A stretch of 55,696 nucleotides of DNA, counting the filler, from Platydemus manokwari (taxonomy: Eukaryota): assembly GCA_037951405.1 (NCBI GenBank). It is 4 parts of 4 records of this genome, joined end to end, with 100 filler letters (N's around TTAATTAATTAA, not from the genome) between each part and the next. Parts side by side here need not be neighbours in the genome. Positions count along the whole stretch, not along the records: positions 10,428 to 29,350 come from JBBMOY010177784.1; 3 more parts are not named here. One strand, 5' to 3'. Below, piece after piece: positions 10,428 to 29,450 of the stretch. How positions within the stretch are numbered: position 1 is the stretch's first letter; every line of letters begins with the position of its first letter. A program made the position numbers and the translations under genes. Below the pieces are notes generated by a model, which searched no databases, was not told where the DNA came from, and worked only from the letters and a program-made list of their open reading frames with translations.

Positions 10428-10489
10428 TTGAATATTTTTATAAATTAAAACAGGCCCTGTTTTGTTTTCTGCATCTTCACCTTCAAAGA

Positions 10490-10650
10490 CATTATAAACA
10501 TCTTTGGGTGGTAAAATTCCATAAGGATCATAATAAATTTTATTAAGTTTATGTGTTGAAACTCAATAAGAACCATCTTCTTTTGTAGTTTCTAAATTCA
10601 TTTTAACATATTTTTGTCAGATGACTTTGCTAAAGTATCTCTCATATTAA
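10490..10650 (-). mobile_element. Decayed Maverick/Polinton adenain-like cysteine protease fragment
   Basis: The minus strand reads MRDTL..(frameshift)..KYVKMNLETTKEDGSY*VSTHKLNKIYYDPYGILPPKDVYN. This matches the Polinton protease pattern MRDxL...INLD..xxGTHWV...YFDSFGxxPP, with the Trp codon mutated to TGA. Confidence 0.55.
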
Positions 10651-12063
10651 TTTTAATTTAAATCATCATCAATATCTTTTAAATAAAAATTAGTAGTTTT
10701 ATTAATTTTATTTTTATCCAAAAATATTTTTATAAAATCCATTTTTTTAAAAGATAAAAAATTTAACTTGTTTAATGTGTAGAATATATTTCCACTCTCA
10801 AACTTGTCTAAGGTGTAATTATAGTGATATTTCTTCTTCATTAAAGTCTGTTAAATTCCCAATTAGATATGTTATTTAAGAAGTGATTTTGATAACACAT
10901 TAAGTGAATATCAGAAAATAGATTACTTGATTTACTTCTGTAATAGATAAATAATCTGGCAGAAGACTATAATCGGATAATTATGAATAATATTCGGTTG
11001 TTGAGACATAACATAAATGGTGTTACTGCTCAGATAAAACCACAGTAGCTTTGAACAACATATTCAGGTATTAAAAGTACATTGTAGAAGAGTATATGGA
11101 CAATTGAGAACACTAGGTAATAAATAATAGCCAATTTCTTATATGAATGAATTATAAATGTAGATGTTTTCTTTCGACTAGAATTTTTTTGCTTCTTGAC
11201 AAAAATAATTTCAGAAATTAGGAAAACTGAAAATAGATGAGAATGATGTTAATCAAATACTGTAAATCTAATAAGAATAAGAATTGTGCTTCATTAAATC
11301 CCATCAAGTAATATTACTACAGTCTAATAAATATTTCTCTTTTTTTAAAGAATGGTATTTATTATTATGACAGATACATCAGAGAGAAAAATCACATCTT
11401 ACATTATTGCTACATTTAGATAAATAAATGAATTCATTAAATAGATTCTAATAAATTAATTTGAAAATATTTTCAGTTTCACAAGAAGCATAAAGAATTG
11501 AATTATAAACTTTAAGTTTTGAGAACAAAGTAAATATCTGGTAAATTGTTTGAGATTTATAGTCGAATAATTTATATCCATTATGCATATTTTTACCATT
11601 TGATTTTATTTGGCAAAAACTTTAAGTCATGTATTTAATATTTGGTTTAAATAATATCACATAAACGGTTTCTAAATTTAATTCGTTGAAATTTCTTGAA
11701 ATAATAATAATTTGATTTACCTCATAAATAAATAAAAAGTAGCACATTTCACAATCAATTTAATAAATATTTAGGAAAACAGACGATATGTAAATACCAA
11801 AATGATGACGAAATTTTATAGAATTCTCTGTTTCTATTTATGAGACAGACTTTCCGAATTTTTTAAAGTCGAATATATCACAATAAAAATTATGTTTTAT
11901 AATCAGTTATATTATTATAAAATAAACGAATATTTCTAAACAATATGGTGAGATACATTTTCATATTAAATGATCTAAAAATTTAAACACAAGTAGATAA
12001 AATCAATTAATTTATCACATAAATAATGAGTTAAGTGTTTCGAAGATAGATCTTAATAATCAT

Positions 12064-12972
12064 TTAATGGCACTCGTATTCCTCTTGTTTTTTAGATTTG
12101 CAAATGTTACCAGTGGATGTTATTTTTCTAATTAATGAAGTATTAGTAAAACAAAATCCAAATAGCTTCAACAATTTAGTAGCATTTTCTGTAGATCCAG
12201 CCAATTTTCCTGAACCTATAACACCCCATTGATTTGCAGCCATATTGTCAATGAAACTATCAACATCGAATATTGATGTTGATAAAACTCCAAAGACCAA
12301 ATTTTTAATACCGATTAAATTATGAAACTCATGGATCGGGTAATAACATGCAAAATAACTTTGACATTTACCTTCTGTTAAATAAGCCACTAGATTGTTC
12401 GCGACAATTTGTATTTCAGATTTGTACTTATTCATCGAATTGATGAGATCTATGTTTCCCCATGCAATTAATCTATTATTTTTATATTTAGCAGTTGCAG
12501 CAGATACTCTACCTTTGCTGAGAGTTCCAATTGAAATTAAATCACTTTGGCTTTTCTGTGAAATTGTAAAAAAATTATTCTTAGTATTCATGTGATGAGC
12601 CCGAAGTCCTTTTAGAACTTCATATCTAGCATGGATCGGATTTGAAAACTAAATCAACATATAATAGAAATTCAATGATGTATGAAGTGAACTCACCTGA
12701 AACGCGAAATTATTATTGAAATATGCTTTAACATTTTGGCAATCATTATGTGATTCACAAGTCTGTTCGAAAATGTAAAAGTAACACTTCATCGATTTCT
12801 CATCAAAATAAAATATTTGGCAATTTATAGATGTGCATCGAATAACACAATCAAATAAACTACTTGCTTTCGTTACGCTTGACTCCTTGAATACACAAAC
12901 TATTTTGCTAACAAAATTAAATTGACAGTAAATACAAGTTAGATTTAAAATTGTTAAAAATAGCTTTATCAT
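12064..12972 (-). CDS. Putative secreted protein, 286 aa: signal peptide + PAN/apple-like domain + TCAF/FAM115 N-terminal-like domain (copy A); exons 12972-12697 and 12648-12064
   Basis: ATG at 12972 (the ORF-track start at 12984 is a TTG). A 48-nt phase-0 intron CAG|gtgagt...tttag|TTT joins two ORF-track entries into an 861-nt CDS. Hydrophobic N-terminus, then C-x3-C-x4-C-x2-F-x-F...C. The exon structure is conserved in copy B. Confidence 0.88.
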
Positions 12973-13654
12973 TTCAAATGGCAAATAAATTTAGTTGTAA
13001 ATATTTTGTGAAATTTTCATGAATTTTCTTTAACCAATAATATTCTTGTTTAAATTTATTAATATGAGTACTTCTAATTGATCATCACTAACGATTTTTT
13101 TTATACTTTCACGTCTAATAACTTATAAATAACTTACTACGTTTCGATTGAATTTACGTTTTGTTAATTTTTGTATCGATTTAATAAGAAATTTTAGATG
13201 TCATATTAATATTGTTTGAATTGCGATGCTTAACGATTTTGGAAATTCAAAGATAAAATTGAAAAACGTTTTTAATAACCGTTATTTTATAATTGGTAAA
13301 AACCGATTTTATGCAGGTAATTTCAAAACACAAGTAAAGTGTTTTGTATTGATTGGTAAAAGTGAAGAGATGTAACCCCATTATTGAACCCAAATTATTG
13401 AACTTAAGAAATGAGAAAAATTATGAAAAATCTTTGAAAATCCTTTTTAACAATATAAAATCTTTCATTTCGAACAGGCGAATACAAATGCAAACGACAA
13501 AAACGTTGAGTCTTAGCTAGTAATTTAGCATGAGTGACTAGAATTAATCTTTGTTTGTGCTCACCATAACTACATTATTGACATAAGTGATGGCAAATTT
13601 TATATTTTAAAAAATATGTGTTAAAAATGACACGAAAACAACTTAAATCTAAAG

Positions 13655-15300
13655 GTTATCACTCTCACCGAGATTGAGGACAACTTCAAAAAACTGGCAA
13701 ACTCGGCACCTGGAAATGTTGGGATCACTTACAAAGACTGGAGATTAATCGACCCCCTGCACATCCTCTTACAATCGATGTTTAATAGTATTCTCAAGAA
13801 CAAAGTAATACCGGATTAATGAAAATAATGCAACACTAATCTTCTCCTGAAACCTAGAAAATAATCAACATCCCCAATGGTCACATCCTGGCGTCCCAAT
13901 GCTCTCACGGACTCGCCTTACCGAATCATCACTACAATACTAAACCTAAGGCTAATGAAATTGATAGATGCTGGAAACACACTGTCACCAAATCAAAAAC
14001 CAATGTTTGCATCAGAAGGATGCGCAGAGCACATTGCCTTTCTGTTATCACTGCAAGAATACGTGGCCCAGCACAACAAGGACTTACATCTCCGCCAGAT
14101 CGATCTCAAAAAAGCCTTCCCAAGTCTACTACACGAGGTCATCTGGTATACGCTTAACAAAATTGGTTGCAATACTCATTACATTGAGATGATCAAGGAC
14201 ATATACCAGGACTCCAAATGAACTTATATCTGTGGAATTCTGAAGACACCGCCAATTTCAATCTGCGCGGAGTAAAACAAGAATGTCCCTTGTCAATGAC
14301 ACTCTTCTGCCTGGCAATTCATTTCTTCCTGCGCTCCTCAGCCAGTATACCAGGGCTTCTCACAATATATTACACTTAATTCTCAACACTGGCCTACGTT
14401 GACGATAACGTTATCATAGCAAATTCTGGAAAGAACTTGGAAAACCGTCTATATCAACTTATTCATCATGCAAAGGTTATTCTACTGACAATCAATACCT
14501 ACAAATGTGGCTACTTCTTCAAAAATAATAAGAACCGAATCAACCAGGCAATATTCAAAGAATTAGTGCCAGTCGTTTATAGTCACAATCGCTAAAAATA
14601 TCTTGGGGTGCCCTTCAGTCTACCCAAGCGATCACAGGTCGACAACATCCTGGAATCAATCATCACAGACTTTGAAGAGATTGCAGACTCCAGACTGCAT
14701 CCTTCACAAAAATTCCAGGCTTAAAAAATTTTTCTGCACTCGAGATTGCCTTTTCATTTCCGAATTCAACAAGTAGAAACTACCAAATTTGATTCAAGTA
14801 AACTGATTGCAAACCAAAATAATGAATCAGTACCATCATTTGACAAAAAAATACATCGAATATCTCGCAAAATACTAGAAATGGACGGATCAAACTCAAG
14901 AAACAACTACTTCTGCTATGCACCCACCAAACTAGGCGAGATCGGACTCACTACATCCAACATTGAATGTTGCATACAGAGTATTGTCGGTGCCTTCTAT
15001 TTTTTCACAAGCCCTGACCAAGAATTTAGAACATTTATGTCAAACCACATAATCAACATTGTGAAGCACAGAATGACTCAAATGATCTCGCGGTAGCACT
15101 TCTCTGGATCTCTGACAAACTATCGACTGAAAAACCATCCTCAGCAGCAACATGGTGGACCAAAACTGGCTTTGCAGTCAGAAAACATAGGAAGAGCCAA
15201 ACCGATGTGAGATTCTACAACCACCACATTGAAATTCTCCAAGAAACTCACAATGGACAACAACAAGACTTAATATTTCAACTCTCAGACATTCTACACG
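13655..15300 (+). mobile_element. Degenerate non-LTR retrotransposon, RT region, probably RLE clade (NeSL/Utopia/R2-like); truncated at both ends
   Basis: Motifs occur in order, with stops and frameshifts: SAPGNVGITYKDW..IDP, SWRPNAL, NQKPMFASEGCAEH, IDLKKAFPSL, GVKQECPLS, LAYVDD (YADD box, about 14390-14405), YLGVPF, LHPSQK..A, and YAPTKLGEIGL. Confidence 0.85.
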
Positions 15301-15698
15301 ACTCGTATTCAAAAATGTATTCAAAAATGTATGACAATAAATGAAGAAAAAACAGATATATAAAATCCAAGATTTTAATTAACGATTTGAAGATGCTAAG
15401 CTGAAAGAAAATAAACATATTAAGTTCAAAAAATCAATAGATCGAACAATTTGGCAAAAACATTTTATTAACAGGGCAGTAAATCAATCTGAGAAATTAA
15501 ATACTGCAAAATATAACGATTTCATAATTTTGGACTTCGAAAATAAGTGACTATGAATGAAGTGTCTATTTTAAAACTTCTGAGAAAGCACTTATTATTT
15601 TATTGTTGGTAAACATTTATCAATAAATCATTGCATGAAGTAAATTTGAATACAGGATCAGGAATTAGAATGATAATTCAATACACATGAATGCATTT

Positions 15699-16865
15699 CC
15701 GTAGATTAAGTGTATTAAGACCTACCTGTTTTGCATAAATATTCAGTCTAAAATCCATGGGTTTTAATAGGTGTAGTCAGCAACATAGCTTGTTGGATCA
15801 GCCATTGATGCATGTGATTAGTTAGTTTTCTGTCATTATTCAGCTGCTTCATTATGCTATACAACAAATTGATATTTCAGCTAACAAATTTGTGTGCAAT
15901 TTTTTATCCCAGTAAAATGGCTGAAGGCGAATTTCTTTTACTGCAAGATGCCATTTAAAGTCGTTGAATTTGCCAAACTCAACGGGAATGGAGTTGCAGA
16001 ACGTGAATTTGAACTTCCCCTACTGTCAAGATGATGAAGACATTGTCCAAAGAAAAAGATTATTCGAAGAAGATGCCAAAAGAGAATCAAAATTTGCCAA
16101 AACATGGAGCACAGTGTCCAAAGCTTGAAGTGAAATTGAAAATTTGGATTCTTGAGCACCGTCAAAGAAGAATTGGAGTCTCAACCAAGATGGTCATGCA
16201 GGAGGTTAAGAGAATTGCACAAGCTCAAGATATCACTGACTTTAAAGGAGGCCTTGATGTTACAGAATTAGAAATTATCAGGGTTTGCAAAATAAGAACA
16301 AGAAAAATTTTGTCCCAACAATTGTCTGAAAAAGTCCTATCTTTTCACAAATTTGTCATCAATACCCGGCAACTGTTTAGCTATGAATTTGTCACAGATA
16401 GGCAATACGAATGAAACGCCTTTGAATTTGGATTGTCGTGATAATCACACAACTGATGAGAAATGAACCAAGACAATTCGTACAACAGGTGAGTGAATCT
16501 GATTCAAACTTAGCTCCATCAGGCCTGTTGAAGAAGCCAACAATCTCACAAGTCTACAATGGGTGAAAACGTCATGGGATGTTATCATAAAAGATGTTAT
16601 CGTCAAATAATTTAAGAAAACAGGTATTATTAATAGATTGGATGGCTTTGAAGATGTTGTTATTTTATCCAAAGTGATTCCTCAGACACAGATGATGAGG
16701 ACATTAAAGAATTAGCAACAAAACCGGTTAATCAACACTTGGACACAGGAGATATGTTTGAGAGTGAAGAAGAATTTTATGGTTTCTATGATGAATAAAG
16801 TAATTCAGATTTTTCTAAAATATTTGATATAAAAATGAGGGGGTCTTAATACACGTAATTTACGG
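15699..16865 (+). mobile_element. pogo/Tigger-family DNA transposon, internally deleted and decayed
   Basis: 24-bp TIRs: CCGTAGATTAAGTGTATTAAGACC (15699-15722) versus the reverse complement of 16842-16865, CCGTAAATTACGTGTATTAAGACC, followed by TA. Transposase remnants include FKVVEFAKLNGNGVAEREF, a CENP-B-type HTH (LEVKLKIWILEHRQRRIGVSTKMV), IGNxNETPL and C-terminal WVKTSWDVI..FKKTGIINRLDGFED. Most of the DDE core is missing. Confidence 0.85.
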
Positions 16866-18475
16866 TAATTATTTTAATACTGAGAACTTTATTGAGAACT
16901 TTATTAATTTTGTTTAATATATATAAGAGGAATATGATAAATCTTTAAATTTATTGATTCAAATGATGTACGAAATTGATAACTGGATATAGATTACAAC
17001 TTTTATTGATTTATTTATATCCTGCATATGTTTTTATTTTTAACCAATCTTTAGTCGTGTATTTCAAATATCAAAATAATTGATATCAACAAATAACACA
17101 CACGCACACTGATGTGAGGGAAATATTTTTTCATCAATTACATTCAGCCAGCAATAGTTTCTGATTACCAATAGCAGCACCTGTTATGCAATGTTAAACT
17201 TATTTTCATTTTTGAGTGTATTGAATGGAAATTGATATGTGGGACACTCAAATGTTGTTGTGATGAATGAATAAGTCATTTAATATATTATTATTAATGA
17301 AATTTATATTTCATAGCATGTATTTTTGTTTAATTAAAGGCGATTTCTCTAAAATTTTATCAAATAAAATATTGATCCAGTTTGAAGGGCTGTTTTATCA
17401 AAGATTGTTGTTGAATTACCGTAATTGTCATTATTTTGTGAATCTTAAAACTGTTGATAAATTTAAAATGTTTTTCACAATTGGTTGTTTAGGCTTTATC
17501 CGATTTCAGGACTCTCAAATACATCAAATTTATTTTATCTGTACACAATCTAAGAAAGAATCTTTGTTACCAGAATATTTTTTTTATTTTTTATCTAAAG
17601 CAATTTCTAGGAATTTTTTAATGAAAAATCTTGACCCATTTTGAAATTATTGTTTTTCGGCTTTCAATGAATTTTACGTGATTGATTTCTTGATATACGG
17701 ATTTTGATAATTTAACAAGAGTAATTTATTTTGATGGTTTTCGGTTTTGTTGTTTATCACATAATTTGATGAATTTACATTCAGATCAGTCGATTATTGA
17801 TATTTTGTGAATCATATAATGCCGTTATAACCTGTAAAAGAATTTGTCTCCAGAAATTATATTGATTGAACATTTTTTTCAAATAGTAAAATAGTTATTT
17901 CAGTAAAATCGATTTCATTCCAAATATTTTATTCGTGTGTAATTATAAAAGCTTGGTAATAGGATTTGACAAAATAATAAAATTTCACAATCTTAAAGCC
18001 AGTATACAATGTTTTATGAACGAAATTGACAAAAAATACAAGTAGTGTTTGAAAAGGTTAAAAGTAGATTTATCATTTTTAAAATGTTTCAAATTTTTTA
18101 AATATATTGTGATACTTTATTGTTCCTCATTTTTCATAGGCCAATATAATCAATAAACACTGACGTACATCTTTTGTGGAGAAGCTATGAATGAGGGAGT
18201 TGATTAAATATTGATTATATGAAAGTGCTGGTACATCTCAAATTTGATAAAATCAATGAAAAGATCAATAAAGAAAGTTTAAATTACTCATTAAATATAC
18301 TACTAAATTAAAGTAAATTTATCAAGCTAAAATACTCTTTTTTAATTTATCAGCTTTATAAAACATTATTTCACTGGATTGTAAATGACTTTACCTTGTT
18401 ATTCCATTAAAATTTTATATAAAAATATATTATATAATATAAGAAGTATAAAATGAAATATTTAGAAAAAATTAT

Positions 18476-18673
18476 TCATCTGATATATTTGGCTTTTTTG
18501 CAATGAAAATGATGATGGAATTCATCAGGGAAATTTATTTTTGTTCTAATTTCTTTGGTTAGCTGATAAATTTTATCAATTTTATCGTTACTGCAGAACT
18601 GAGGAAAACTTTTCATAAATTCTGGTAGAATTTCTATTTTTTTGATATATTTTTCAGTCATTTTGTTCCAAAC
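18476..18673 (-). CDS. Possible isolated exon or pseudogene fragment of unknown protein
   Basis: Acceptor-like attcag| followed by an open frame VWNKMTEKYIKKIEILPEFMKSFPQF...KAKYIR*. No recognised motif and no partner exon found. Confidence 0.25.
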   Translation of the reverse strand, partial: VWNKMTEKYIKKIEILPEFMKSFPQFCSNDKIDKIYQLTKEIRTKINFPDEFHHHFHCKKAKYIR

Positions 18674-21600
18674 CTGAATCTCATTCGTGTATTAAAAATG
18701 GCGTTCAAAATTGAATTAAGGGCAAAGGCAATTCATTTTTAGGATATAAATATGCACACAAAATATCGATAGAAGAACAAATTAATATAGTGGTTGATGT
18801 ATTGTTTCACTGAAACGTAAATATCTATAACAATATCTAGTTGAAGCCTAAAATTTATCTAATAATAATTTGATTTTTTAATATTTTTATCGAAAATAAA
18901 TTTATTTAAGCATGTTTTCAAAGATTTTTCAAAATAATAATAATAATAATCACTGACTTGAAAGTAAAATACAGTTGTGCCACAATGTGTGAAGTACGTC
19001 ATGAGTCTCAATTTTAATATAACAGATTTTCACAACGTTTAATAATATTTTTTAATAAAATCAATTCAAATTTGATAATGCGGTCAAATTATCCCTCACG
19101 TGACATTCCAATCAATCTGATTTCAATGAATTGCAAAACAGCATGACTACGGAAGTCACTTATTAAAGAAGGCTTTTGTAGAAACTGCAAATTATAATAA
19201 AAAAATAGAAATATAAAGATCTTAATTAAAAAAATATTCTTAATATCTTCACCAGTAAACATCTCATATCTCGTTATAATTGTATTAAACAGTTTTATTT
19301 ATACTACTTATTAAAACCAGTAATATATCAATCAAGTTGAATATTGAAAGAAACATTTTTCATTTATTTCTTTTTATATATCTACCAATAAATCTCTCGA
19401 TAATACCTAATCTTCGATTGAGGCTTATCATTATTTTAGAAGATTAATTGAACTAATAAAAATCAATAATGACTTTTGAAAGATCTAAATGTGAACTTCT
19501 ATATCTAAGTTCTGAGTAAACATTCTTTTTTAATATAATTTAATTAGAATTGAAGGATAACAATAATATTTTATATATTTTATAAATATTAATAATAATA
19601 TATTATTTTGGAGACAATCGATTTATTTTTATACACAAATTATTTTATCAATAAGATTATCATTTAATCAATAATAATATTGTTGGTTTCAAGCTAAATT
19701 TAATTCATTGTATTATCCATTGAGTTTATTTGAGTCAACGTGGGATTTGTGAAATCAATAAATCAATAAATCGATTATAATTATCAAATTTGTGAACTCA
19801 ATTGATTTGATTTTTAACGGGTCAGATTACGATTTAAATCGACATGATAACGTGTTGAATTTGCTAAAGATTAATAATATCTGAAACGGATATTTGTATT
19901 TATTGATTTGGTTATATTAAAAATAATAATTAATTACCAAAAATCAATAAAAAATTAATAAATTAAAGTAATAGTTTTAGCAAAATATAAAAGATTTAGG
20001 CATCGCCAAGAAATTAAAAAAATTGACGCGTTGTTTCCTCAAATAGAAGCGTGTTAATATTTTATTGATTATTTGATATATGAATAAAGAATAATTTTTA
20101 ATTGATAAATAAAATAAACAAAATAAGAAAATAAATATTACTCATTGAATAAGAGTCTAATTATGAGCAGCCTTTGAAAATGTCGAACTTGTTTAGCTGG
20201 GTATTAAGAGTAAAAATATTCTAGAACCCGTAAAACCCACGGTCCTGATGAAATAAGTTGGTCGTGGTCACAGAAGCACAGTAACAGTGAATTCAATGAA
20301 GAAATATTTTTTCAAAATATTTCCAGAGATATGATTGATACAAATATGTATAAAAATAGATACAATGGTGAATATTGATATTTCTGAAATAAAACTACAT
20401 TTTAAAAGAGGTTTCAATCAATTCTATGAATAAAATTTTTGGAGTCATGTGTTTTGAACTGCATTCCAACATATTGACTAAAACATGGACTATTTAAGAA
20501 TTCATAATTCATTATGTAGTAATCGAAAATTTCATAAAGTAATCTTAGAACAGAAGGCATTCAATATCACATAGATTTAGACGCTAATTGTCTTTGCTGT
20601 GTATCATTAAATATATCGGCAAGGAAATTTCAATAAATTCCATTATTAATGAATCGATCTTTCTAATAATCAAAATAATTTTTCAATAACAAGTTTTATT
20701 ATTCGATACTATAAAATAACAAAACTATTTTTCTCATTCCAAACAATCGATATCTATGCTTGTTAATTCGCTTACTATTACAACTTTATAAAACTGTGTA
20801 TCATGAATAGATTTAGTTTATCAGGCATCACAGCCGATGAAAAATTAGATGAATTTCATCACTGAATGGTTTTGTCTCTTTTTCTCATTAGAAGTCTTTG
20901 CTATCGGAGAAATTAGTGCCTGATTTAAACAAATATCAGATAAGCTTTTATTTCAAACATTCGATATATTTTTTCAGAATAATATCAACAAAAATAACGC
21001 CATATCACAGCAACTTACAAGGTTTGTTGAAATATTTAAAATATCGCTTAATATTTTGTGCCAGAAATTAACGATAAATTGTGCCACTTTTTAACGAATT
21101 TTTTATTGATATTTACATAACGAGGTCGATAATAAATTGATTACGATAATAAGTGATTACTTTAAAGCTGTATTCTTGATCTAATTTAGAAAGATTTTCT
21201 ACACCTTTTCCAAAATTTTAATTTAATTTAAAAAATCTCATTTTCATCCAGATAATTAAAATAATTGACCAGTTTAGAGAATAATTATTTATTCAAAAAC
21301 GCGTTTTATGTAAAGCCTTAACGGTCAAAGTTGTTTTATCAAAATATTAAATTATCCAACAGACATCATTAATGATCTAAAAATTAACAAATAAAAAGTC
21401 AATTCTTTTCGCACACATTACAATAAATTGAATTGTTTATTGATTTATTATTATTATATATTTATCGATATTTGATATTATAAAACCAATGAAATTTAAT
21501 AGTTTAGAAAGATCAAATCTGATTTGATGTTAAAAATATCGAAGGGTTTTACGATTTGGATTAGAAACCATAAAATCAATAAATTACTTAAATACTAAAA

Positions 21601-22886
21601 TAAATCCTGTTAAACGAAAACTTAATAATGGAACATGCAATCAACAAAATCGAAATATCAGTCCCTAAATTTAAATCTTGTGCAGCTGATTTGTCTCTAA
21701 ATTTATAAAATAGTGCTCTCATTATATGGTTACACAACTTTATTTTCTAACAATACAAAATTTATAACGAAACTACTTTAATAAATAGAGATTGTTATTA
21801 TTTTCAGATAGTCACTCAAATTATTCGTCGAGATACAACTTCAATCTTTTCAAACCTATAATTATCACATTTTATCTCAAGTAGTTGAAAGGGGGGAGCA
21901 ATATTTTTATTTCTGTACTTGATTAGTTATTAATATAAAAAAATATTGGCATTCTTAGTTTCAAAGATAGACTTTATTAATTCCCATGGATATGTATCAG
22001 TGTGGGGTATTTTAATTTTATCAATTCAATTTACCTTGTTCTAATAATAGTTATTCAAGTTGTTTTTGTAAAACTAGGATCTAAACACGAATCAATAAAT
22101 ACTGACAAATAATTTTTGTTCTTTTTGAATATTTATTCAGACTAAATGTATCGCGTTTTGCTTGATTATATTCAAATTAATTTAATTTGCAAACCCAATC
22201 TCTCCTTGTCTCGCTGTCATGGTATGAAGGAAACCTTTCAAGATGATATCATTTATCACGAATAAGGCTCATTCGAAACTTAAATAACATTTTATATGAG
22301 ATTCCTTTTCCATTGTTTTTATATAACATCTTAAATTTATAATTAAAATTGTTGGTCATTTTAATAAAGCATCGTGAAAACAAAAATCGGATAAATTTAT
22401 TTTTCAGAATCAACAAGTTAGAGCACTCATCACATCAAAATAAAATTATATTTGAAATCATTTCAGTAAAGCTAGAAGAAGAAAAAATCAACAAAAGCAC
22501 TCACAATGTGTTTTGACTATGTTATCTCAATTATTGAGAATTTCAGTATTGATTCATGATATTATTGGTGCTATATTTTTAATCACATTATTTATTATGA
22601 TTTACACCACAACGTCAATTGTTAATAACTTGATTTTGGAATAATTTTATAAAACAGTTTTATTTTCATGGAATTTTTTGATTCGGTATTTGTACAAATA
22701 CAATGATTCTTCATTATCAATTTGTTTGATATCAGGTTGATCAAGAAAATATTCAAACAATATGACAAGCTATATTTTGACATCAAACGGTTTAAAACAC
22801 AGTAAAATAAATCTACTAATTTATCACATAAATAATGAGTAAAATGTTTTGAAGATAGATGAAGAGAAAAATGTCTTGATACTCAT

Positions 22887-23792
22887 TTAATGACATTCGT
22901 ATTGGTGTTGTTCTTTAGATTTGCAAATGTTACCAATGGATGATTTTTTCCTAACTCTTAAAATATCAGTTAAACAAAATCCAAATAGCTTCAACAATTT
23001 AGTAGCATTTCTTGTAGATCCAGCCAATTTACCTGAACCAATAACACCCCATTGATTCGCAACCATATTTGCAATGAAACTATCAATATCGAATATTGAT
23101 GTTGATAAAACTCCAAAAACCAAATATTTTATACCAATAAATTTATGAAACTCATCGATCGGGTGATAACAAATAAAATAACTTTGACATTTGCCTTCCG
23201 TTAAATATGACACTAGATTATTGGCGACAATTTGAACATCAGATTTGTAGTTATTCATTGAATTTATATGAACCTTGTTCCCCCATACAATTAATCTATT
23301 GGTTTTATATTTAGCACTTGCAGCAGATGTTCCACCTCCGCCAAGAGCTCTAATTGTAATAAGTTCATTCTCACTTTTCTGTGAAATTGTAAAAAAATTA
23401 TTGTTTGCATTTTTGAAAGGACTATTAATTCCCTTAAGTACCTGATATCTTGCATGGGTCGGATTTGAAAACTAAATAAAGAAATAGAAGATATTTAATA
23501 ATAAATGAAATTTCACCAGTGAAGCAAAATTATTATTGAAATATGCTCGAACATATTTACAATCATTATTCGAATCACAAGTCTCTTCGAAAATATAAAA
23601 GTAACATTTCAATGATTTATCATCAAAGTAAAATATTTGACAATTGATAGAGGTGCATTGAATAACACAATCAAACAAATTATTTCCTTTCGTTACACTT
23701 GACTCCTTGAATACGCAAACCATTTTACTCTCAAAATTAAATTGACAATAAATACAAGTTAGATTTGAAATGATCAGAAATAGTTTTATCAT
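22887..23792 (-). CDS. Putative secreted protein, 286 aa: signal peptide + PAN/apple-like + TCAF N-terminal-like domain (copy B); exons 23792-23517 and 23471-22887
   Basis: 45-nt phase-0 intron CTG|gtgaaa...tttag|TTT at the same position as in copy A. Exon lengths are identical (276 + 585 nt) with no indels, and 74 of 92 exon-1 residues are identical to copy A. Confidence 0.88.
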
Positions 23793-24269
23793 TTTAAATG
23801 ATGTTTTAATGTTTGTAAGAGTTTAAATTTGCTGTCAAATTTTTCTTTAATCATTTATTTTCTTGTAAAAATGTCCAATGATTTGTTGGTATGAATACAC
23901 ATGTGTGTTCACTTATCAAATAACGCCTTTGATTATCATTTTTTTATTCTTATTGATTGGCTTCACGTTTGATGGTTTATATGCAGTATATTATGTTTTG
24001 TTGAGGTTCTTGTTCTACTAAATTGTATCGATTAAATATGAAGTAAAAATTATAAGAATAATGCACAACAACCGGTATTTTTCCAAACTATTTTTGCTTA
24101 TTATTTAATATAATTAGCTGAAAGTGTTTATGTTTTAATTTTCATAGTTTTAGTATGTAAAATACAAGGCTAAGGACTGTTTAAAAATAAAGTATTAAAA
24201 TAAAGAAATGAAAGAACACTTGGTGACTTAATATCCCCCGTTTAGATTGGACTTTTAATACAACTGATA

Positions 24270-25720
24270 ATTATCGCTTGAATCAAATTATTTTTATTGA
24301 ACACCGTCTAAAGGGTATCCCTCTTGTAAGATACTAAAGTAAAATAAAAAACTAAAGGAATGTGTTGTGAAAATGAAAATGATTCCATGCATAAATGAAC
24401 TTAAACAACGGAACTTGAAGTCGATAAGAATCGGTACGAAATTGTGAAGAAAAATATGACGTATGTGTCTTCTAGTAGCTTGAATCTAAATTCACTATGC
24501 ATGGTAGATGGAATATGCTCTTAGTGACATCTTTGAGCATTAATATTAACAACAAATTGACGGATATATTTTATACAAAAGATGATCGACAGATAAAGGT
24601 GATAAAATATCAATGTAACCAATGCAAAATGGTGACATCAAAATACATAAATGATACAGTGCATACATCGACGTCAAATACTGTAACTCTATTAAGTCAA
24701 TCAAATATGTTTGCAAGTACCTGGACAAGGCCAGAGACATAGAGCTTTTGGTGTGCTACCAGAAAGAGTTGATGGAACTGTATCCATATACATTCAGTAA
24801 AGCAAAGAGTATCAAGCAGGAATAAATTAAACAACAATTATGCTATATGACAAATTCTTTCTTTAATCGTAAATGAATGACTCCCATCTGTTGTTTATTC
24901 AGCAGTACATCTGGATAATGAACTTTTATGTCAAAATGATCTTTTGTTTAACTTCTTTTGTATTCGGAGGTTTCTACACATGGAATATAGGCAGTAAATC
25001 TTTTCAAGGACGTAAAAGAAGAAGACGATCTGGCGACTTAAAAACTTCTAAAGATAAACTGTATTCCTTGTAGTCAATTAAGAGGACTAGTTTTTTCTTC
25101 CCATTTTGTTGATAAATGTTTCCAGTCGAACGTCTTTACAGGATTTATCCAGGAACTATCAATGCGTTAGGCATTTTACTTTCCACAGTATATGCAAAGT
25201 TGTGCATTGATTGAAAAGCGACGGACACTGTAAAGTATGGATTTATTCAAGAGGCCACATCCAAAATAATTGTGTGAATTATTTGTAATTCTATTGATAA
25301 TCGCTCTTCTTCATCTCAAGCAAAGTTATGAAAAAAAAGTACATGTCTGAAAGTAATTGGCGTAGAATACATGAATATATTCAAACTTTGATAATGATTG
25401 AGGATTAGTGCTTGTATATCAAAAACAAAGTTCTCAATTAATAAAGATTTTCTAAATAAATTAATTCAAGCAACAATTCGATTACAAAATAGTATAATCT
25501 CAATTGTGGCATTTATGGGAAAAACTGTGCTACTGCTCACAGTTGGAACAACTGCTCATTCCGATATGACATTGCCTTTTAATATTCGATTCGTTAAAAT
25601 ATTGACATGCATTTTTTCAAAGACATTCGGCATAATAAAAGTTTTACAGAAATCACCTTTAGTTTGGGACGAATCCATAGGGATGCATAAAATATCATTT
25701 TCACTTTCACATCAGGAAAA
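24270..25720 (+). mobile_element. Degenerate Helitron Rep/helicase fragment
   Basis: Remnant motifs in order: CMVDGICS, HIDVKYCNSIKSIKYVCKYLDKARD (cf. HINVExCxSVKSIKYxxKYxxKGxD), FYTWNIGSKSFQGRK, LLINVSSRTSLQDL, VGTTAHSDMTLPFNI (PIF1 GRTAHS) and LVWDE (Walker B). Many stops and deletions. Confidence 0.85.
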
Positions 25721-27310
25721 CATCAAAATTATATGCAGGGGATTTTAGCCACACATTTCAATAATCTGTATAATATGAGCTTTTTTATTTTATCTAAATG
25801 ATATTAAAATAGCGATGTATTTATTCTAAATTAGATCAAAAATTAAATCCAGTGTTAAAAAAAATCACAAAATATTAAATTAATATGTAATTTTATTTTG
25901 TTTAAACTGAACAGGTATTGATTAAAGCACAGTGATGAAAATACTTAATTTAATTTATTTTGAAAATTTAATAATTTATTATTTTTATTGATTTTTTTAT
26001 TCGAATATCGTTTCAGGAATATTTTTATCAAAATAACCCTTAATTAGAATATTATAAAACGAACATTCAAATCATTTGATCAATCATAAACAAAAGATGT
26101 GCAATCAAGAATAAAAGCAGTCGCACAATATATTGATTTAACTATTCAGAAAGAAAATCCTACGAATTTGTCAAGCTCAAATATCATTTGAGATTATATA
26201 AATGAATATGGAGTGATGAAAGTTTGAAATTGAAAATTGATAAAAACTCTTTTATCTGATATCTGCTGTTGCCATTATGATATGAAACGGACGCCAATTT
26301 TGGTTATAAGCAATGTTGATAAAATTAAATAGAGACTCGACAATTTCCAGATGAAATTTATTTCAATTTTCATCACAAGAGATGCCTGATAAACTTTATC
26401 GATTCATGATAATAGGTTTACAGAATATTGAAGCAGTATTGGAATTGATATTAATGGATTAAATGAAATAATCGGCTTCACAAATGATCGATTTAGCTTC
26501 AATGGTATGGCATAATAACAAGAAATTATGTGAATTGTTTCTATATGTATTGGTTATTGAATTCATGAATGAACTAATCAATATTATGAGCAATATAATG
26601 AATACAAGTTATAACACCGATTGTTAGCTCCAGTAAATATAAAATATAATTCATCACACACTAATTCATCATCGATATGAAAATGGATGTCTCATCCAAT
26701 AGTAACGATTTTAAGAAATTTCGCAATTCAACATTCTGGGTGCAGAATTATTGTAAAAATAAACTATAAAAGAATTCAAGAAAATATCATTTCAGTTATA
26801 AAATATAAAAAATTGATTTAAACTTGTCATATTTAGACGAAAAATATTTTAGCGGCTTCCATTGTGAATTTTCATTGTTTATCAATTAAAAAATCATAAT
26901 TATTGATTAAAACAATTAAAACAAACATCCCATCTAGTAGTGAAGCAACATTGAAATTGCAATAAATCATATTTAGGGATAATCGAGTAGTAATTACAGG
27001 CCGGTAACAATTGATATTAAAAACAGAAAATTCAGAATAAAATTTAAAAATTAATTTTAATCTTGAATTAAGCAGAAAATACTTAAAATGAATGAAATAT
27101 TGATTTGTCAATCTCGATTAGTGTTTTCTTTAGCAAAATTAATTTTTATTCTCTGAACGTAAATCAGAGTTGGTGACACTGTAATGTATAAAGATAACCA
27201 TGACTGAATGATGAAAATATCGTAACAAAATACGAACTGAGCTTTAGTTCAATATCAAGACTTCATCCCATCATTATTAATAAAACTTTTTTGGAGCAGA
27301 TACATTATTA

Positions 27311-27433
27311 CAGGGGTGGCCAACCGTTTGATCGCGATCGACTGTTTGATCTTGAGGCCAACTTTAGTCGGTCGCGTGAGATGTTATTCAAATGAAAAGT
27401 CGATCTTACGAACACAAAAGTTGGCCACCTCTG
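27311..27433. mobile_element. hAT-family MITE (Buster/Charlie type), 123 bp
   Basis: TIRs CAGGGGTGGCCAAC ... GTTGGCCACCTCTG. 8-bp TSD cattatta (27303-27310) / cattattg (27434-27441) with central TA. Confidence 0.85.
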
Positions 27434-29126
27434 CATTATTGGGCATTATATTATTTTATATTTAACAATGTATTCCTAATCTCCATTTTGTGCACAGTGA
27501 AAAATCCAAACATAAAATTTATGTCAATAAATTTATCAATTAAATTATGTTTTGTATTTGTTTTCTCTTTTAAATTATGTATTTTGTGATGGCCAGTTAT
27601 CACCATGTTTTCCAAATATTTTGATCAATTCTTCTCTTAGCAAAAAAAATTTAATTTGAAAATCTTTTTTTATCTTGTTCTTTGATTTGTTTGAAACGCA
27701 ATTGCTATAATATGCCTCGATAACACAATATTTTATTAATCTATTGGTTCTATACTTAACTATTGTTTTGATAAATTAAAGTCAATGGAGGGCAATTATA
27801 TAAAAGATAGCAAAACAATATGCTTAGTATCGGTGGCATCTCTTGACAAACTGTCAAAGCAATCTCTCATATTATTGTTTTAATTACCGTTGATTATCGG
27901 AAATGCCCATGAATATTGTTTATGTAATTCAATACAATTACCATATCTCCTGAGGTAACAGATGTTTGAAAAATACAAAATAGTAGTCTAAAATTTTTTT
28001 GTAATGAAAAATTATTTTGTCTTATCAATAATTTATTAAAATTTCCAGCTCAAACTTTCGGGCGCACAGTTTTGATTTACTGGAATTGCCTCTTTCGGCA
28101 TATGAGTTTGAAAGTAAATTTAATGGAGATTTCAACATTTGAAATTATATCTGCTAACATTTGTAGTCGAATTCTTGAATCGTTGAGAACACAGAGCAAT
28201 ATCAAAATGGAATTGAATGCTTTGTCATGCTTTGAACAAAACATGAAATGTAGCAGTGTTTGGCGGCACGATTTTAAATTTGAAAAGTACAAAATAAAAA
28301 CGACCGATAAGTGTTTTTATTGTGTCCTGTATTGCACATGTAACTAAGTTCGTTTTCTCAACTTTGTGTAAAAGATAAAATACTTTGCTTCATATTTTTC
28401 TCACATTGAAACATTTATTGCTACCAATTTCTTCATTGCTTTGAAACTAGAGATCATATAAATTTCAAGTGGTTTCTGATGGAAACTTGTTAAAAAGAAG
28501 ACAAAGTTGCAAGTGAAAAGGAATAAAGTTCCATGACAAATCCTAATTTTCATAAAAATCTTCAAATAATTTGCAAAGTAATGCTACAAGTCTTACTTTT
28601 GTTATATTAGGAAAAATATTACAATCACTACAAGTATGCCTATATAAAATTAAAAACAACACAGACACCGACGAATAACTATTTATACAAAAATTATAAA
28701 TACAATTCATAATAATTTTAGTCATGACAGAGGAAAATTAGGTGCGCGCAAGACAGGAGTTTCTGTGATTCTTTTTCTACATGAAGTATATCTATCTAGA
28801 TATTGTATTGATTAAAATATGTTTTTGTTTGAATCATTTCTCAACCTCCAGTAGTATGATTTAACAAATATTATTAGGAGAGGACAATCACGAAATGAAT
28901 AATTTTCCAAAAAATTTTTGAAAAACATTATTTTTTAAAATAGAAAATGTAAAGAAAAAATTTATTAACGTTTTGTGAAAATGTTTCAAGATTTTTATGG
29001 CGTTTGCTCAAGATGGTAAATCATAACGCGATCAATTTTTATATTAAATTGGGTGTTTGTTTGGTACAATGAAATCAAAACGATTTTTAAAAATTGAAAA
29101 TTTTTTATCTTAAAGTTTATCAGAGT

Positions 29127-29450
29127 NNNNNNNNNNNNNNNNNNNNNNNNNNNNNNNNNNNNNNNNNNNNNNNNNNNNNNNNNNNNNNNNNNNNNNNNNN
29201 NNNNNNNNNNNNNNNNNNNNNNNNNNNNNNNNNNNNNNNNNNNNNNNNNNNNNNNNNNNNNNNNNNNNNNNNNNNNNNNNNNNNNNNNNNNNNNNNNNNN
29301 NNNNNNNNNNNNNNNNNNNNNNNNNNNNNNNNNNNNNNNNNTTATTATATNNNNNNNNNNNNNNNNNNNNNNNNNNNNNNNNNNNNNNNNNNNNTTAATT
29401 AATTAANNNNNNNNNNNNNNNNNNNNNNNNNNNNNNNNNNNNNNNNNNNN
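29127..29450. other. Sequence gap (215 N), 9-bp islet, then an artificial 100-bp spacer at 29351-29450
   Basis: N-runs; TTAATTAATTAA at 29395-29406 flanked by 44 N on each side. Confidence 0.97.

What the first reader, a model, noticed from the sequence alone, without database searches (positions are those of the whole stretch)
12064..23792. Duplicated secreted proteins fusing a PAN/apple-like domain to a stand-alone TCAF/FAM115 N-terminal-like domain
Seen: joining split ORFs across 48- and 45-nt introns gives two intact 286-aa paralogs. Exon 1 encodes a signal peptide and Cys-rich PAN-like module; exon 2 encodes a 194-aa domain; the intron is phase 0 at the domain boundary. Inference: exon 2 aligns by eye, collinearly, with the N-terminal alpha/beta (GATase1-like) region of TCAF/FAM115 proteins as I recall it: ARYEVLKGL ~ AFEALMNGV; GRVSAATAKYKNNRLIAWGN ~ GQVLIAASSYGRGRLVVVSH; ANNLVAYL ~ LLNAVGWL; MAANQWGVIGSG ~ MKCGGGLLIGG; KLLKLFGFCFTN ~ NLVTSVAGIYFTD. 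In TCAFs this region precedes an M60 peptidase-like domain. Here there is no M60 domain or HEXXH motif, extra cysteines are present, and the protein looks extracellular. I know of no described family with this architecture. It could be an exon-shuffled, lineage-specific mucus, defence or ion-channel-interacting protein family.
Basis: partly seen in the sequence, partly recalled or inferred. Interest (0 to 1): 0.75.

Follow-up and report, generated by a model that had tools for sequence, protein, structure and literature searches.

The report
Secreted PAN plus TCAF_N-like gene family
Two intact neighbouring genes belong to a family of at least 150 copies in this AT-rich animal genome; each encodes a small secreted protein that joins a PAN/apple module to a stand-alone copy of the N-terminal domain otherwise found in TCAF and IMPa M60 peptidases, most likely as a binding module rather than an enzyme.

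Summary
Both genes are intact 286-codon, two-exon genes on the minus strand, with phase-0 GT..AG introns of 48 and 45 nt at the domain boundary.

- **Family size:** they are two members of a family with at least 150 exon-1 and 150 exon-2 matches in this genome. The intron position is kept in 39 of 40 copies examined. Selection is purifying (dN/dS 0.31 between the two).
- **Exon 1:** a signal-peptide-like N-terminus followed by a divergent PAN/apple module. A family profile hits TgMIC4 and HGF PAN domains (E 5e-5 and 3e-4). The AF2 model's best PDB matches are almost all PAN modules (Z up to 7.4).
- **Exon 2:** no Pfam, PDB-sequence or protein-database hit. Its AF2 model (pLDDT 90) matches only the N-terminal domain of IMPa (Z 10.3; next best 3.1). 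Its best Atlas matches are TCAF_N/IMPa_N_2 proteins (TM 0.67-0.71), and language-model look-alikes are TCAF_N clusters.
- **Absent:** no M60 domain and no HEXXH.

The proposed function, a secreted glycoprotein or glycopeptide binder, is an inference. The organism was not identified. The joined spliced protein was never searched or folded.

The parts
12697..12972 (-). Gene 1, exon 1: start codon, signal-peptide-like 16 residues (12925-12972), then a Cys-rich PAN/apple module
   Evidence: Translation; PAN evidence; hydropathy of residues 4-15
12649..12696 (-). Gene 1 intron, 48 nt, phase 0, GT..AG
12064..12648 (-). Gene 1, exon 2: 194-aa TCAF_N / IMPa_N_2-like alpha/beta domain plus stop codon
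   Evidence: Translation; AF2 model pLDDT 90; fold matches; hhalign
23517..23792 (-). Gene 2, exon 1: signal-peptide-like N-terminus (23745-23792) plus PAN/apple module
23472..23516 (-). Gene 2 intron, 45 nt, phase 0, GT..AG
22887..23471 (-). Gene 2, exon 2: 194-aa TCAF_N-like domain plus stop codon; open from the acceptor site even though ORF listing shows only the part after an internal ATG
11938..13055 (-). Duplicated unit around gene 1: about 80 nt upstream of the ATG to about 125 nt past the stop, 80% identical to the gene 2 unit
   Evidence: blastn of the flanks
22755..23872 (-). Duplicated unit around gene 2

Best explanation
These are two functional members of a large, tandemly and dispersedly amplified gene family of an AT-rich animal genome. 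The genome looks planarian-like, but the organism was not identified. Each gene has two exons and encodes a protein of about 270 mature residues with 12 cysteines, routed to the secretory pathway. Exon 1 supplies the signal peptide and a divergent PAN/apple module. Exon 2 supplies a stand-alone, highly diverged homologue of the N-terminal alpha/beta domain found in front of M60 peptidases (Pfam TCAF_N PF27016 / IMPa_N_2 PF18650). No peptidase part is present. Inferred mechanism, not shown: the protein is a non-catalytic extracellular binder. The PAN module is a fold used by galactose-binding lectins and protein-binding apple domains. The TCAF_N-like module is the fold in which IMPa holds a glycopeptide-binding exosite. 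Together they would bind glycoprotein or mucin-type ligands, for example to organise mucus or to recognise foreign surfaces. Paralogue diversification, fastest in the first ~60 residues and the C-terminal tail of exon 2, would tune specificity. I put about 0.85 on the structural identity and about 0.35 on this particular function.
For: Gene models. Conserved phase-0 intron in 39 of 40 copies. Purifying selection. Family size: at least 150 scored matches per exon out of 494 and 391 first-look candidates, about five in six without internal stops, and several contigs with two copies. Secretion: a basic residue followed by a 12-residue hydrophobic stretch in 32 Met-started members (mean Kyte-Doolittle 2.12), no other membrane-like segment, and an N-x-T sequon at residue 155 in 26 of 42 members. 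PAN. TCAF_N-like fold: AF2 pLDDT 90.1, pTM 0.88; IMPa residues 82-301 at Z 10.2-10.3, 167-177 residues aligned, next chain Z 3.0-3.1; Foldseek E 5.4e-4; Atlas TM 0.67-0.71 to four TCAF_N/IMPa_N_2 clusters; language-model scores 0.94 and 0.93 to TCAF_N clusters. Sequence signal: hhalign score 31.0, P 1.1e-3; with a looser alignment cut-off the alignment is collinear over 183 columns; controls scored 8-22. IMPa's N-terminal domain PF18650 carries an exosite that bound a ligand in a crystal structure (PMC10550946; also described as a proline-binding domain in PMC9513282). The same architecture occurs in more distant proteins P0028 and P0002.
Against: No HMM-level sequence membership: no member hits PF18650, and PF27016 is not in the local Pfam. 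The hhalign probability is only 21%. The family profile found no TCAF or IMPa protein among 1.84 billion representatives. It also shows no similarity to this genome's own M60 protein N-termini (P 0.15). I did not check that IMPa residues 82-301 are the PF18650 domain; I assumed it from domain order. Whether IMPa's exosite residues are conserved could not be examined. No expression, secretion or binding data exist here. Signal-peptide prediction was a hydropathy calculation, not SignalP. Copy number may be inflated by allelic contigs in a very fragmented assembly of about 2 million contigs.
Confidence: 0.7

Rival explanations
1. Exon 2 is a generic three-layer alpha/beta domain that resembles IMPa_N_2/TCAF_N by convergence, not by common descent. 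On this view the family is a true orphan.
For: HMMER-level searches are all blank. The hhalign probability is only 21%. Identity in the structural alignments is only 9-14%.
Against: The match is specific. Only IMPa chains exceed Z 3.1 among 48,161 representatives. Two other methods independently rank TCAF_N first. The profile-profile alignment is collinear over the whole domain and beats reversed, column-shuffled and unrelated-domain controls.
Confidence: 0.1
2. Exon 2 is an enzyme (a class I glutamine-amidotransferase-like or ThuA-like hydrolase), and the family encodes secreted catalysts rather than binders.
For: GATase-like, ThuA and GIFT clusters appear at 0.87-0.88 in the language-model search. 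PF06283 ThuA is co-annotated on some TCAF_N proteins. Cys101, Cys166 and a frequent His103 are conserved.
Against: No GATase1 chain appears among the 50 best PDB rows. The conserved cysteines number 12 in the mature protein, consistent with disulfides. The homologous domain in IMPa is an exosite, not a catalytic site. GIFT and TCAF_N domains are not known to be catalytic (background knowledge).
Confidence: 0.1
3. As with vertebrate TCAFs, the proteins act on ion channels such as TRPM-type channels, here from outside the cell.
For: Only the shared TCAF_N-like fold.
Against: Apart from the TCAF_N-like module itself, the parts of TCAF proteins (helical domain, M60-like domain) are absent. The proteins look secreted. 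More than 150 diverging paralogues do not fit a single-channel partner. This genome has separate canonical TCAF-like M60 genes.
Confidence: 0.05
4. The copies are passengers of a mobile element or decaying pseudogenes without a host function.
For: High copy number. Transposon debris lies between the two window genes. About one copy in six has internal stops.
Against: The duplicated unit is just the gene, with about 80 nt upstream and 125 nt downstream and no terminal repeats seen. The spliceosomal intron is retained, so the copies are not retrocopies. dN/dS is well below 1 across about 170-190 pairs. Cysteines and motifs are invariant.
Confidence: 0.03

Closest known systems
IMPa (Pseudomonas aeruginosa M88/M60-like O-glycopeptidase), N-terminal domain, Pfam IMPa_N_2 PF18650 (PDB 5KDV, 5KDW, 5KDX, 7JTV)
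   Same: Same alpha/beta fold over 167-177 of the 194 residues (Z 10.2-10.3, rmsd 3.6-3.8). Extracellular context. In IMPa this domain holds a ligand-binding exosite.
   Different: IMPa is a bacterial enzyme of about 900 residues with helical, Ig-like and M60 catalytic domains. Here the domain stands alone after a PAN module. Identity is 9-10%, there is no PF18650 HMM hit, and there is a family-specific T-x-G-K-C-x-S-Y-x-x-C-Y-H loop with two conserved cysteines.
TCAF1/TCAF2 (FAM115) and other eukaryotic and bacterial TCAF_N (PF27016) + M60 proteins
   Same: Best predicted-structure and language-model matches.
   Different: Those proteins have 700-920 residues with the TCAF helical, M60-like_N and Peptidase_M60 domains. 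Vertebrate TCAFs are cytosolic channel partners (PMC11300232). The window proteins have none of these domains, carry a signal peptide and 12 cysteines, and are fused to PAN.
This genome's own canonical TCAF-like M60 genes (L061-L065, e.g. L065:232-2514, 760 aa with an HEIGH motif)
   Same: Their N-termini align to TCAF_N-annotated N-termini (hhalign P 2.3e-5, probability 76%), so the fold's usual context exists in the same genome.
   Different: No detectable similarity to the exon 2 family (P 0.15). They are single long ORFs with M60 domains, so they are not recent donors of exon 2.
PAN/apple modules: HGF N domain, plasminogen PAp, TgMIC4 apple domains, Sarcocystis SML-2 lectin, leech anti-platelet protein
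   Same: Same fold (Z 5.7-7.4), the same core cysteine spacing, and profile hits at E 5e-5 to 3e-4. Several of these are secreted carbohydrate or protein binders.
   Different: Below the Pfam PAN_1 gathering score (13.6 against 21.4 bits for gene 1). There are seven rather than six cysteines after the signal peptide. A single module is fused to a TCAF_N-like domain.
P0028 (UniParc UPI000603172D, 291 aa) and P0002 (311 aa, Logan run SRR33002330)
   Same: Same order of parts: signal-like N-terminus, Cys-rich PAN-like stretch, then the exon 2 domain (profile E 9e-14 and 1e-42).
   Different: They come from other, unidentified sources and are much diverged. P0002 appears to read through its intron. 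Neither carries a name.

Membership tests
PAN/apple superfamily (Pfam PAN_1 PF00024) | PAN fold: a central helix packed on a curved antiparallel sheet | tested here: met
   AF2 model pLDDT 81. Nearly all of the top 10 PDB matches are PAN/apple modules, Z 5.7-7.4.
PAN/apple superfamily (Pfam PAN_1 PF00024) | Conserved core cysteine pattern | tested here: met
   C42, C46, C51 and C63 are invariant; C26, C72 and C78 are present in at least 90% of 40 members.
PAN/apple superfamily (Pfam PAN_1 PF00024) | Score over Pfam's gathering threshold | tested here: not met
   Gene 1 scores 13.6 bits against a cut-off of 21.4; gene 2 has no PAN_1 hit. 29 of 40 members hit at E<=1, best 1.7e-4. The family profile hits solved PAN domains at 5.2e-5. 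It is a divergent member.
TCAF_N (PF27016) / IMPa_N_2 (PF18650) domain superfamily | Shared three-dimensional fold with a solved member | tested here: met
   IMPa residues 82-301, Z 10.3, 174 residues aligned, next chain Z 3.1. Foldseek E 5.4e-4.
TCAF_N (PF27016) / IMPa_N_2 (PF18650) domain superfamily | Best matches among predicted structures and sequence-feature look-alikes carry the family | tested here: met
   Atlas rows 1-4 carry TCAF_N or IMPa_N_2, TM 0.67-0.71. Language-model ranks 1-2 are TCAF_N clusters, 0.94 and 0.93.
TCAF_N (PF27016) / IMPa_N_2 (PF18650) domain superfamily | Profile-profile sequence similarity to annotated members | tested here: inconclusive
   hhalign A1 against 32 PF27016-annotated N-termini: score 31.0, P 1.1e-3, probability 21%, collinear. 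The 34 controls scored 8-22.
TCAF_N (PF27016) / IMPa_N_2 (PF18650) domain superfamily | Hit by the Pfam HMM | tested here: not met
   PF18650: no hit in any of 42 members at E<=10 and none in the six-frame genome search (its controls were also silent). PF27016 is absent from the local library, so that model was not testable.
TCAF / IMPa-type M60 peptidase proteins | Peptidase_M60 domain with an HEXXH zinc site, preceded by M60-like_N | tested here: not met
   No M60 hit in either gene or in 42 members. No HEXXH in the translations. The stop codon follows the domain directly.
Class I glutamine amidotransferase-like (GATase1) fold | Fold match to GATase1/ThuA/DJ-1 chains and a Cys-His-Glu triad | tested here: inconclusive
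   No such chain among the best 50 PDB rows. The only hints are ThuA/GIFT clusters at 0.87-0.88 and ThuA co-annotation on some TCAF_N proteins. The triad was not examined.
Secreted protein | Cleavable N-terminal signal peptide | tested here: inconclusive
   Hydropathy and a basic n-region are conserved in 32 members, with no other hydrophobic segment. SignalP was not available.

The most novel reading that the evidence does not exclude
The TCAF_N/IMPa_N_2 fold is an autonomous glycopeptide (mucin-type) recognition module. This animal has detached it from the peptidase context, fused it to a PAN lectin-like module and amplified it into a repertoire of more than 150 diversified secreted receptors. 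These would serve mucus organisation or non-self recognition. If so, it would also point to what the unexplained N-terminal domain of vertebrate TCAFs binds.
Probability: 0.3. Interest if true: 0.7.

Novelty: new variant of a known kind. Interest (0 to 1): 0.5.

Why it matters
The TCAF_N domain has no established function. It has been seen mainly as an appendage of M60 peptidases, or of vertebrate TCAFs whose peptidase-like domain is of unclear activity.

Here it occurs alone, in a secreted, disulfide-rich setting, next to a PAN module, and under purifying selection in well over a hundred paralogues. That argues the domain works on its own as a binding unit, in line with the exosite seen in IMPa.

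It also gives a fold assignment to a large, sequence-orphan gene family of a planarian-like genome. Such families are candidates for mucus, adhesion or defence biology. The practical lesson is that this family is invisible to Pfam and HMMER but clear by structure.

Tried and rejected
**Searches of exon 2 that found nothing useful**
- Pfam scan of each exon product gave only noise for exon 2.
- PDB sequence searches found nothing related, either with the single sequence (weak E 0.057 hit to a GluR0-like periplasmic binding protein, not borne out by the fold search) or with the family profile.
- The word-indexed search of 5.8 billion proteins was blank.
- The full HMMER profile search of 1.84 billion representatives found 36 hits, all family-like short ORFs. 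No TCAF or IMPa protein was among them.

**Family models and own-genome comparisons**
- PF27016 is not in the local Pfam.
- PF18650 found nothing in the genome, and its controls were silent too.
- hhalign of the family against this genome's own M60 protein N-termini showed no similarity (P 0.15), so exon 2 is not a recent copy of those genes.

**Source organism**
- Cluster look-up and contig look-ups gave only accession-level sources.
- The Atlas search with P0028 returned only PAN clusters.
- The organism stays unidentified.

**Literature and other tools**
- Nothing was found on this architecture in planarians.
- The primary IMPa structure paper (PMC5293097) is not held.
- No tRNAs and no notable tandem repeats in the piece.

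Everything was done exon by exon, by reference.
- I considered folding a natural read-through ORF such as L018 (314 aa) and rejected it, because it would include translated intron.


Full report
**1. What is in the sequence**

The usable piece (10428-29350) is AT-rich: 22-29% G+C, apart from transposon-derived stretches at 33-39%. On the minus strand lie two gene-sized units.

| | Exon 1 | Intron | Exon 2 |
|---|---|---|---|
| Gene 1 | 12697-12972, ATG at 12972, 92 codons | 12649-12696, 48 nt, GTGAGT..TTTAG | 12064-12648, 194 codons + TAA |
| Gene 2 | 23517-23792, 92 codons | 23472-23516, 45 nt, GTGAAA..TTTAG | 22887-23471, 194 codons + TAA |

Both introns are phase 0. The mechanical ORF list hides the first part of gene 2's exon 2 only because it starts ORFs at an ATG. 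The frame is open from the acceptor site.

**2. It is a very large family, not a pair**

- Six-frame searches of the window's own assembly (911 Mb in about 2 million contigs) returned the scoring limit of 150 matches for each exon. The first-look candidates numbered 494 and 391. Identities to gene 1 run from 73-83% down to about 30-45%.
- About five in six exon 2 matches have no internal stop.
- Several contigs carry two copies, so part of the family is in local clusters.
- I fetched 40 copies spanning the whole identity range. In 39 of them an in-frame GT..AG intron of 42-55 nt sits at the same codon boundary. One copy (L018) has GC instead of GT.
- Between the two window genes, similarity (80% over 1.1 kb) begins about 80 nt before the ATG and ends about 125 nt after the stop. 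The duplicated unit is the gene itself.
- dN/dS between the two is 0.31 (exon 1 0.14, exon 2 0.44).
- Over about 170-190 pairs of the closer subfamily the medians are 0.17 for the PAN part, 0.30 for the exon 2 core, 0.52 for its first 60 residues and 0.58 for its tail.
- Retained introns, intact frames and purifying selection show real genes amplified at the DNA level, not retrocopies or chance ORFs. Copy number may be inflated by allelic contigs.

**3. Exon 1**

- The first 16 residues consist of a basic residue followed by a 12-residue hydrophobic stretch, conserved in 32 Met-started members (mean hydropathy 2.12). No other membrane-like segment exists in either exon. This looks like a cleavable signal peptide. 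SignalP was not available.
- The remainder has invariant C42, C46, C51 and C63, and nearly invariant C26, C72 and C78.
- Pfam PAN_1 is below threshold for gene 1 (13.6 against 21.4 bits), but it is the only recurrent family across members (29 of 40, best E 1.7e-4).
- A profile of the 40 sequences hits solved PAN/apple domains: TgMIC4 at 5.2e-5 and the HGF N domain at 3.2e-4.
- The AF2 model (pLDDT 81) finds PAN/apple modules almost exclusively at the top: HGF N domain Z 7.4, plasminogen PAp 7.2, MANEC 6.2, leech anti-platelet protein 5.9, TgMIC4 apple-5 5.8 and SML-2 lectin 5.7 (Foldseek agrees).
- Conclusion: a divergent PAN/apple module.

**4. Exon 2**

Sequence methods see nothing outside the family:
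- Pfam.
- PDB sequences, by single sequence or by profile.
- The 5.8-billion-protein word search.
- A full HMMER profile search of 1.84 billion representatives, which returned 36 family-like ORFs and no TCAF or IMPa protein.

Structure is decisive:
- With a 42-sequence family alignment, AF2 gives pLDDT 90.1 and pTM 0.88.
- Against 48,161 PDB representatives, one chain stands out: IMPa of Pseudomonas aeruginosa, residues 82-301, Z 10.3, 174 residues aligned, rmsd 3.7. The next chain scores Z 3.1. All four IMPa entries listed give Z 10.2-10.3. Foldseek E is 5.4e-4.
- Against ESM-Atlas representatives, the four best rows (TM 0.67-0.71 over 167-183 residues) all carry PF27016 TCAF_N or PF18650 IMPa_N_2. 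They include a chordate TCAF cluster.
- The language-model search independently ranks two TCAF_N clusters first (0.94 and 0.93). GATase-like, ThuA and GIFT clusters appear lower, at 0.87-0.88.

- I fetched M60 proteins annotated with PF27016, among them a Lottia protein, a marsupial TCAF2-like protein and many planctomycete and verrucomicrobial proteins.
- I aligned their first 300 residues (A4) and ran hhalign against the family.
- The result was score 31.0, P 1.1e-3, probability 21%.
- The alignment pairs ARY..LKG with LL.GV, the A.G.YK..RLI.W stretch with AA..G.GRVVAFGH, and ANN.V.YL with L..NA..W. With a looser alignment cut-off it runs collinearly on through the W..I..G and KLL..FGFC.T motifs, 183 columns in all.
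- Controls all scored lower: reversed alignments 9.7 and 12.1, thirty column shuffles 8.2-21.9, the M60 region of the same proteins 20.3, and PAN against A4 10.3.

Taken together I regard homology to the TCAF_N/IMPa_N_2 superfamily as likely (about 0.85). It is very remote and not provable by HMM score here. PF18650 gives no hit, and PF27016 is not in the local library.

Family-specific features:
- A nearly invariant T-x-G-K-C-x-S-Y-x-x-C-Y-H loop.
- Five conserved cysteines (95, 101, 166, 183, 193).
- A frequent N-x-T sequon at residue 155.
- With seven cysteines in the mature PAN part, the total is 12. This is compatible with six disulfides, one possibly between the domains (inference).
- There is no M60 domain and no HEXXH. 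The H-E-F-H in gene 1 is HExH and is not conserved.

**5. Context in the same genome**

- The assembly also holds five or six long single-ORF M60 peptidase genes, each with Peptidase_M60; three of the four ORFs scanned also hit M60-like_N, and the one translated (L065) has an HEIGH site.
- Their N-termini align to TCAF_N-annotated proteins (P 2.3e-5).
- They show no similarity to the exon 2 family (P 0.15).
- So the canonical architecture coexists with the new one, and the new family is not a recent spin-off of these genes.
- Exon shuffling at the phase-0 boundary is plausible but not demonstrated.

**6. Beyond this genome**

Among the 36 profile hits, P0028 (291 aa, UniParc UPI000603172D) and P0002 (311 aa, from a Logan assembly) have a PAN-like N-terminus followed by the exon 2 domain. 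The architecture is therefore older than this species, and it is unnamed. I could not identify the source organisms, nor the organism of the window. That is an impression, not a result.

**7. How it probably works**

Shown:
- Intact, selected genes.
- A secretory-type N-terminus.
- A PAN fold.
- A TCAF_N/IMPa_N_2-like fold.
- No catalytic M60 part.

From the literature:
- IMPa's N-terminal domain PF18650 contains an exosite that bound a ligand in a crystal structure (PMC10550946). It is described as a proline-binding domain aiding recognition of glycoprotein substrates (PMC9513282).
- The PAN hits here include the thio-galactose and lacto-N-biose complexes of SML-2 and TgMIC4 (entry titles).

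Inferred:
- The proteins are secreted, non-catalytic, two-module binders of glycoproteins or mucin-like ligands.
- The paralogues diversify mainly in the first ~60 residues and the tail of exon 2.
- I give this function about 0.35. An enzymatic role, a channel-related role and 'no function' are less likely (see the rival explanations).

**8. Novelty and verdict**

Both domain kinds are known. Undescribed in anything I could search are the stand-alone secreted TCAF_N-like domain fused to PAN and its amplification to well over a hundred genes. I classify it as a new variant of a known kind, of moderate interest.

Noticed in passing
window 13428-15427, ORF 13877-14218 (+): Reverse-transcriptase fragment (RVT_1, E 3.8e-10) in a block of raised G+C (0.37-0.39 against about 0.25 around it). 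It is broken into several short ORFs, so probably a decayed retrotransposon lying between the two paralogues.
   Followed up: partly
window 16031-16411 (+): A 127-aa ORF with a weak, below-cut-off match to the Tc5/pogo transposase DNA-binding domain (HTH_Tnp_Tc5, E 0.0044). Likely a DNA-transposon remnant.
   Followed up: partly
window 25398-25745 (+): A 116-aa ORF matching PIF1-like helicase (E 3.4e-8). It is a fragment only, and possibly Helitron-derived.
   Followed up: partly
L061-L065 (G000 contigs C1456555, C1430533, C1009525, C26392, C1518412), e.g. L065:232-2514: The same genome carries five or six M60 peptidase genes as long uninterrupted ORFs of 560-760 aa. The one translated (L065) has an HEIGH site. 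The N-termini of three of them (L061, L062, L065) align to TCAF_N-annotated proteins (P 2.3e-5), although the nearest database relative, P0037, has no PF27016 annotation. The absence of introns is striking in a genome whose small genes have them.
   Followed up: partly
L018 (G000:C1496751) 981-1892: One family copy has GC instead of GT at the donor site, and its 60-nt spacer reads through in frame, giving a 314-aa open frame. L015 and L040 also give 301-316-aa read-through frames. P0002 from another source looks the same. Gene callers that ignore introns will report these as single-exon proteins with an insertion of about 20 aa.
   Followed up: no
G000 contigs C1370648, C1604853, C1783061, C1144548, C348892, C103899: These contigs each hold two family copies a few kb apart, some on opposite strands and some with stops. 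The family therefore forms local clusters that mix intact genes and pseudogenes.
   Followed up: no
window 11938-12063 and 22755-22886: About 125 nt downstream of the stop codon is conserved between the two paralogues, including a shared block ending in GTGATAAATTA. It is probably the 3' UTR with the polyadenylation region.
   Followed up: no
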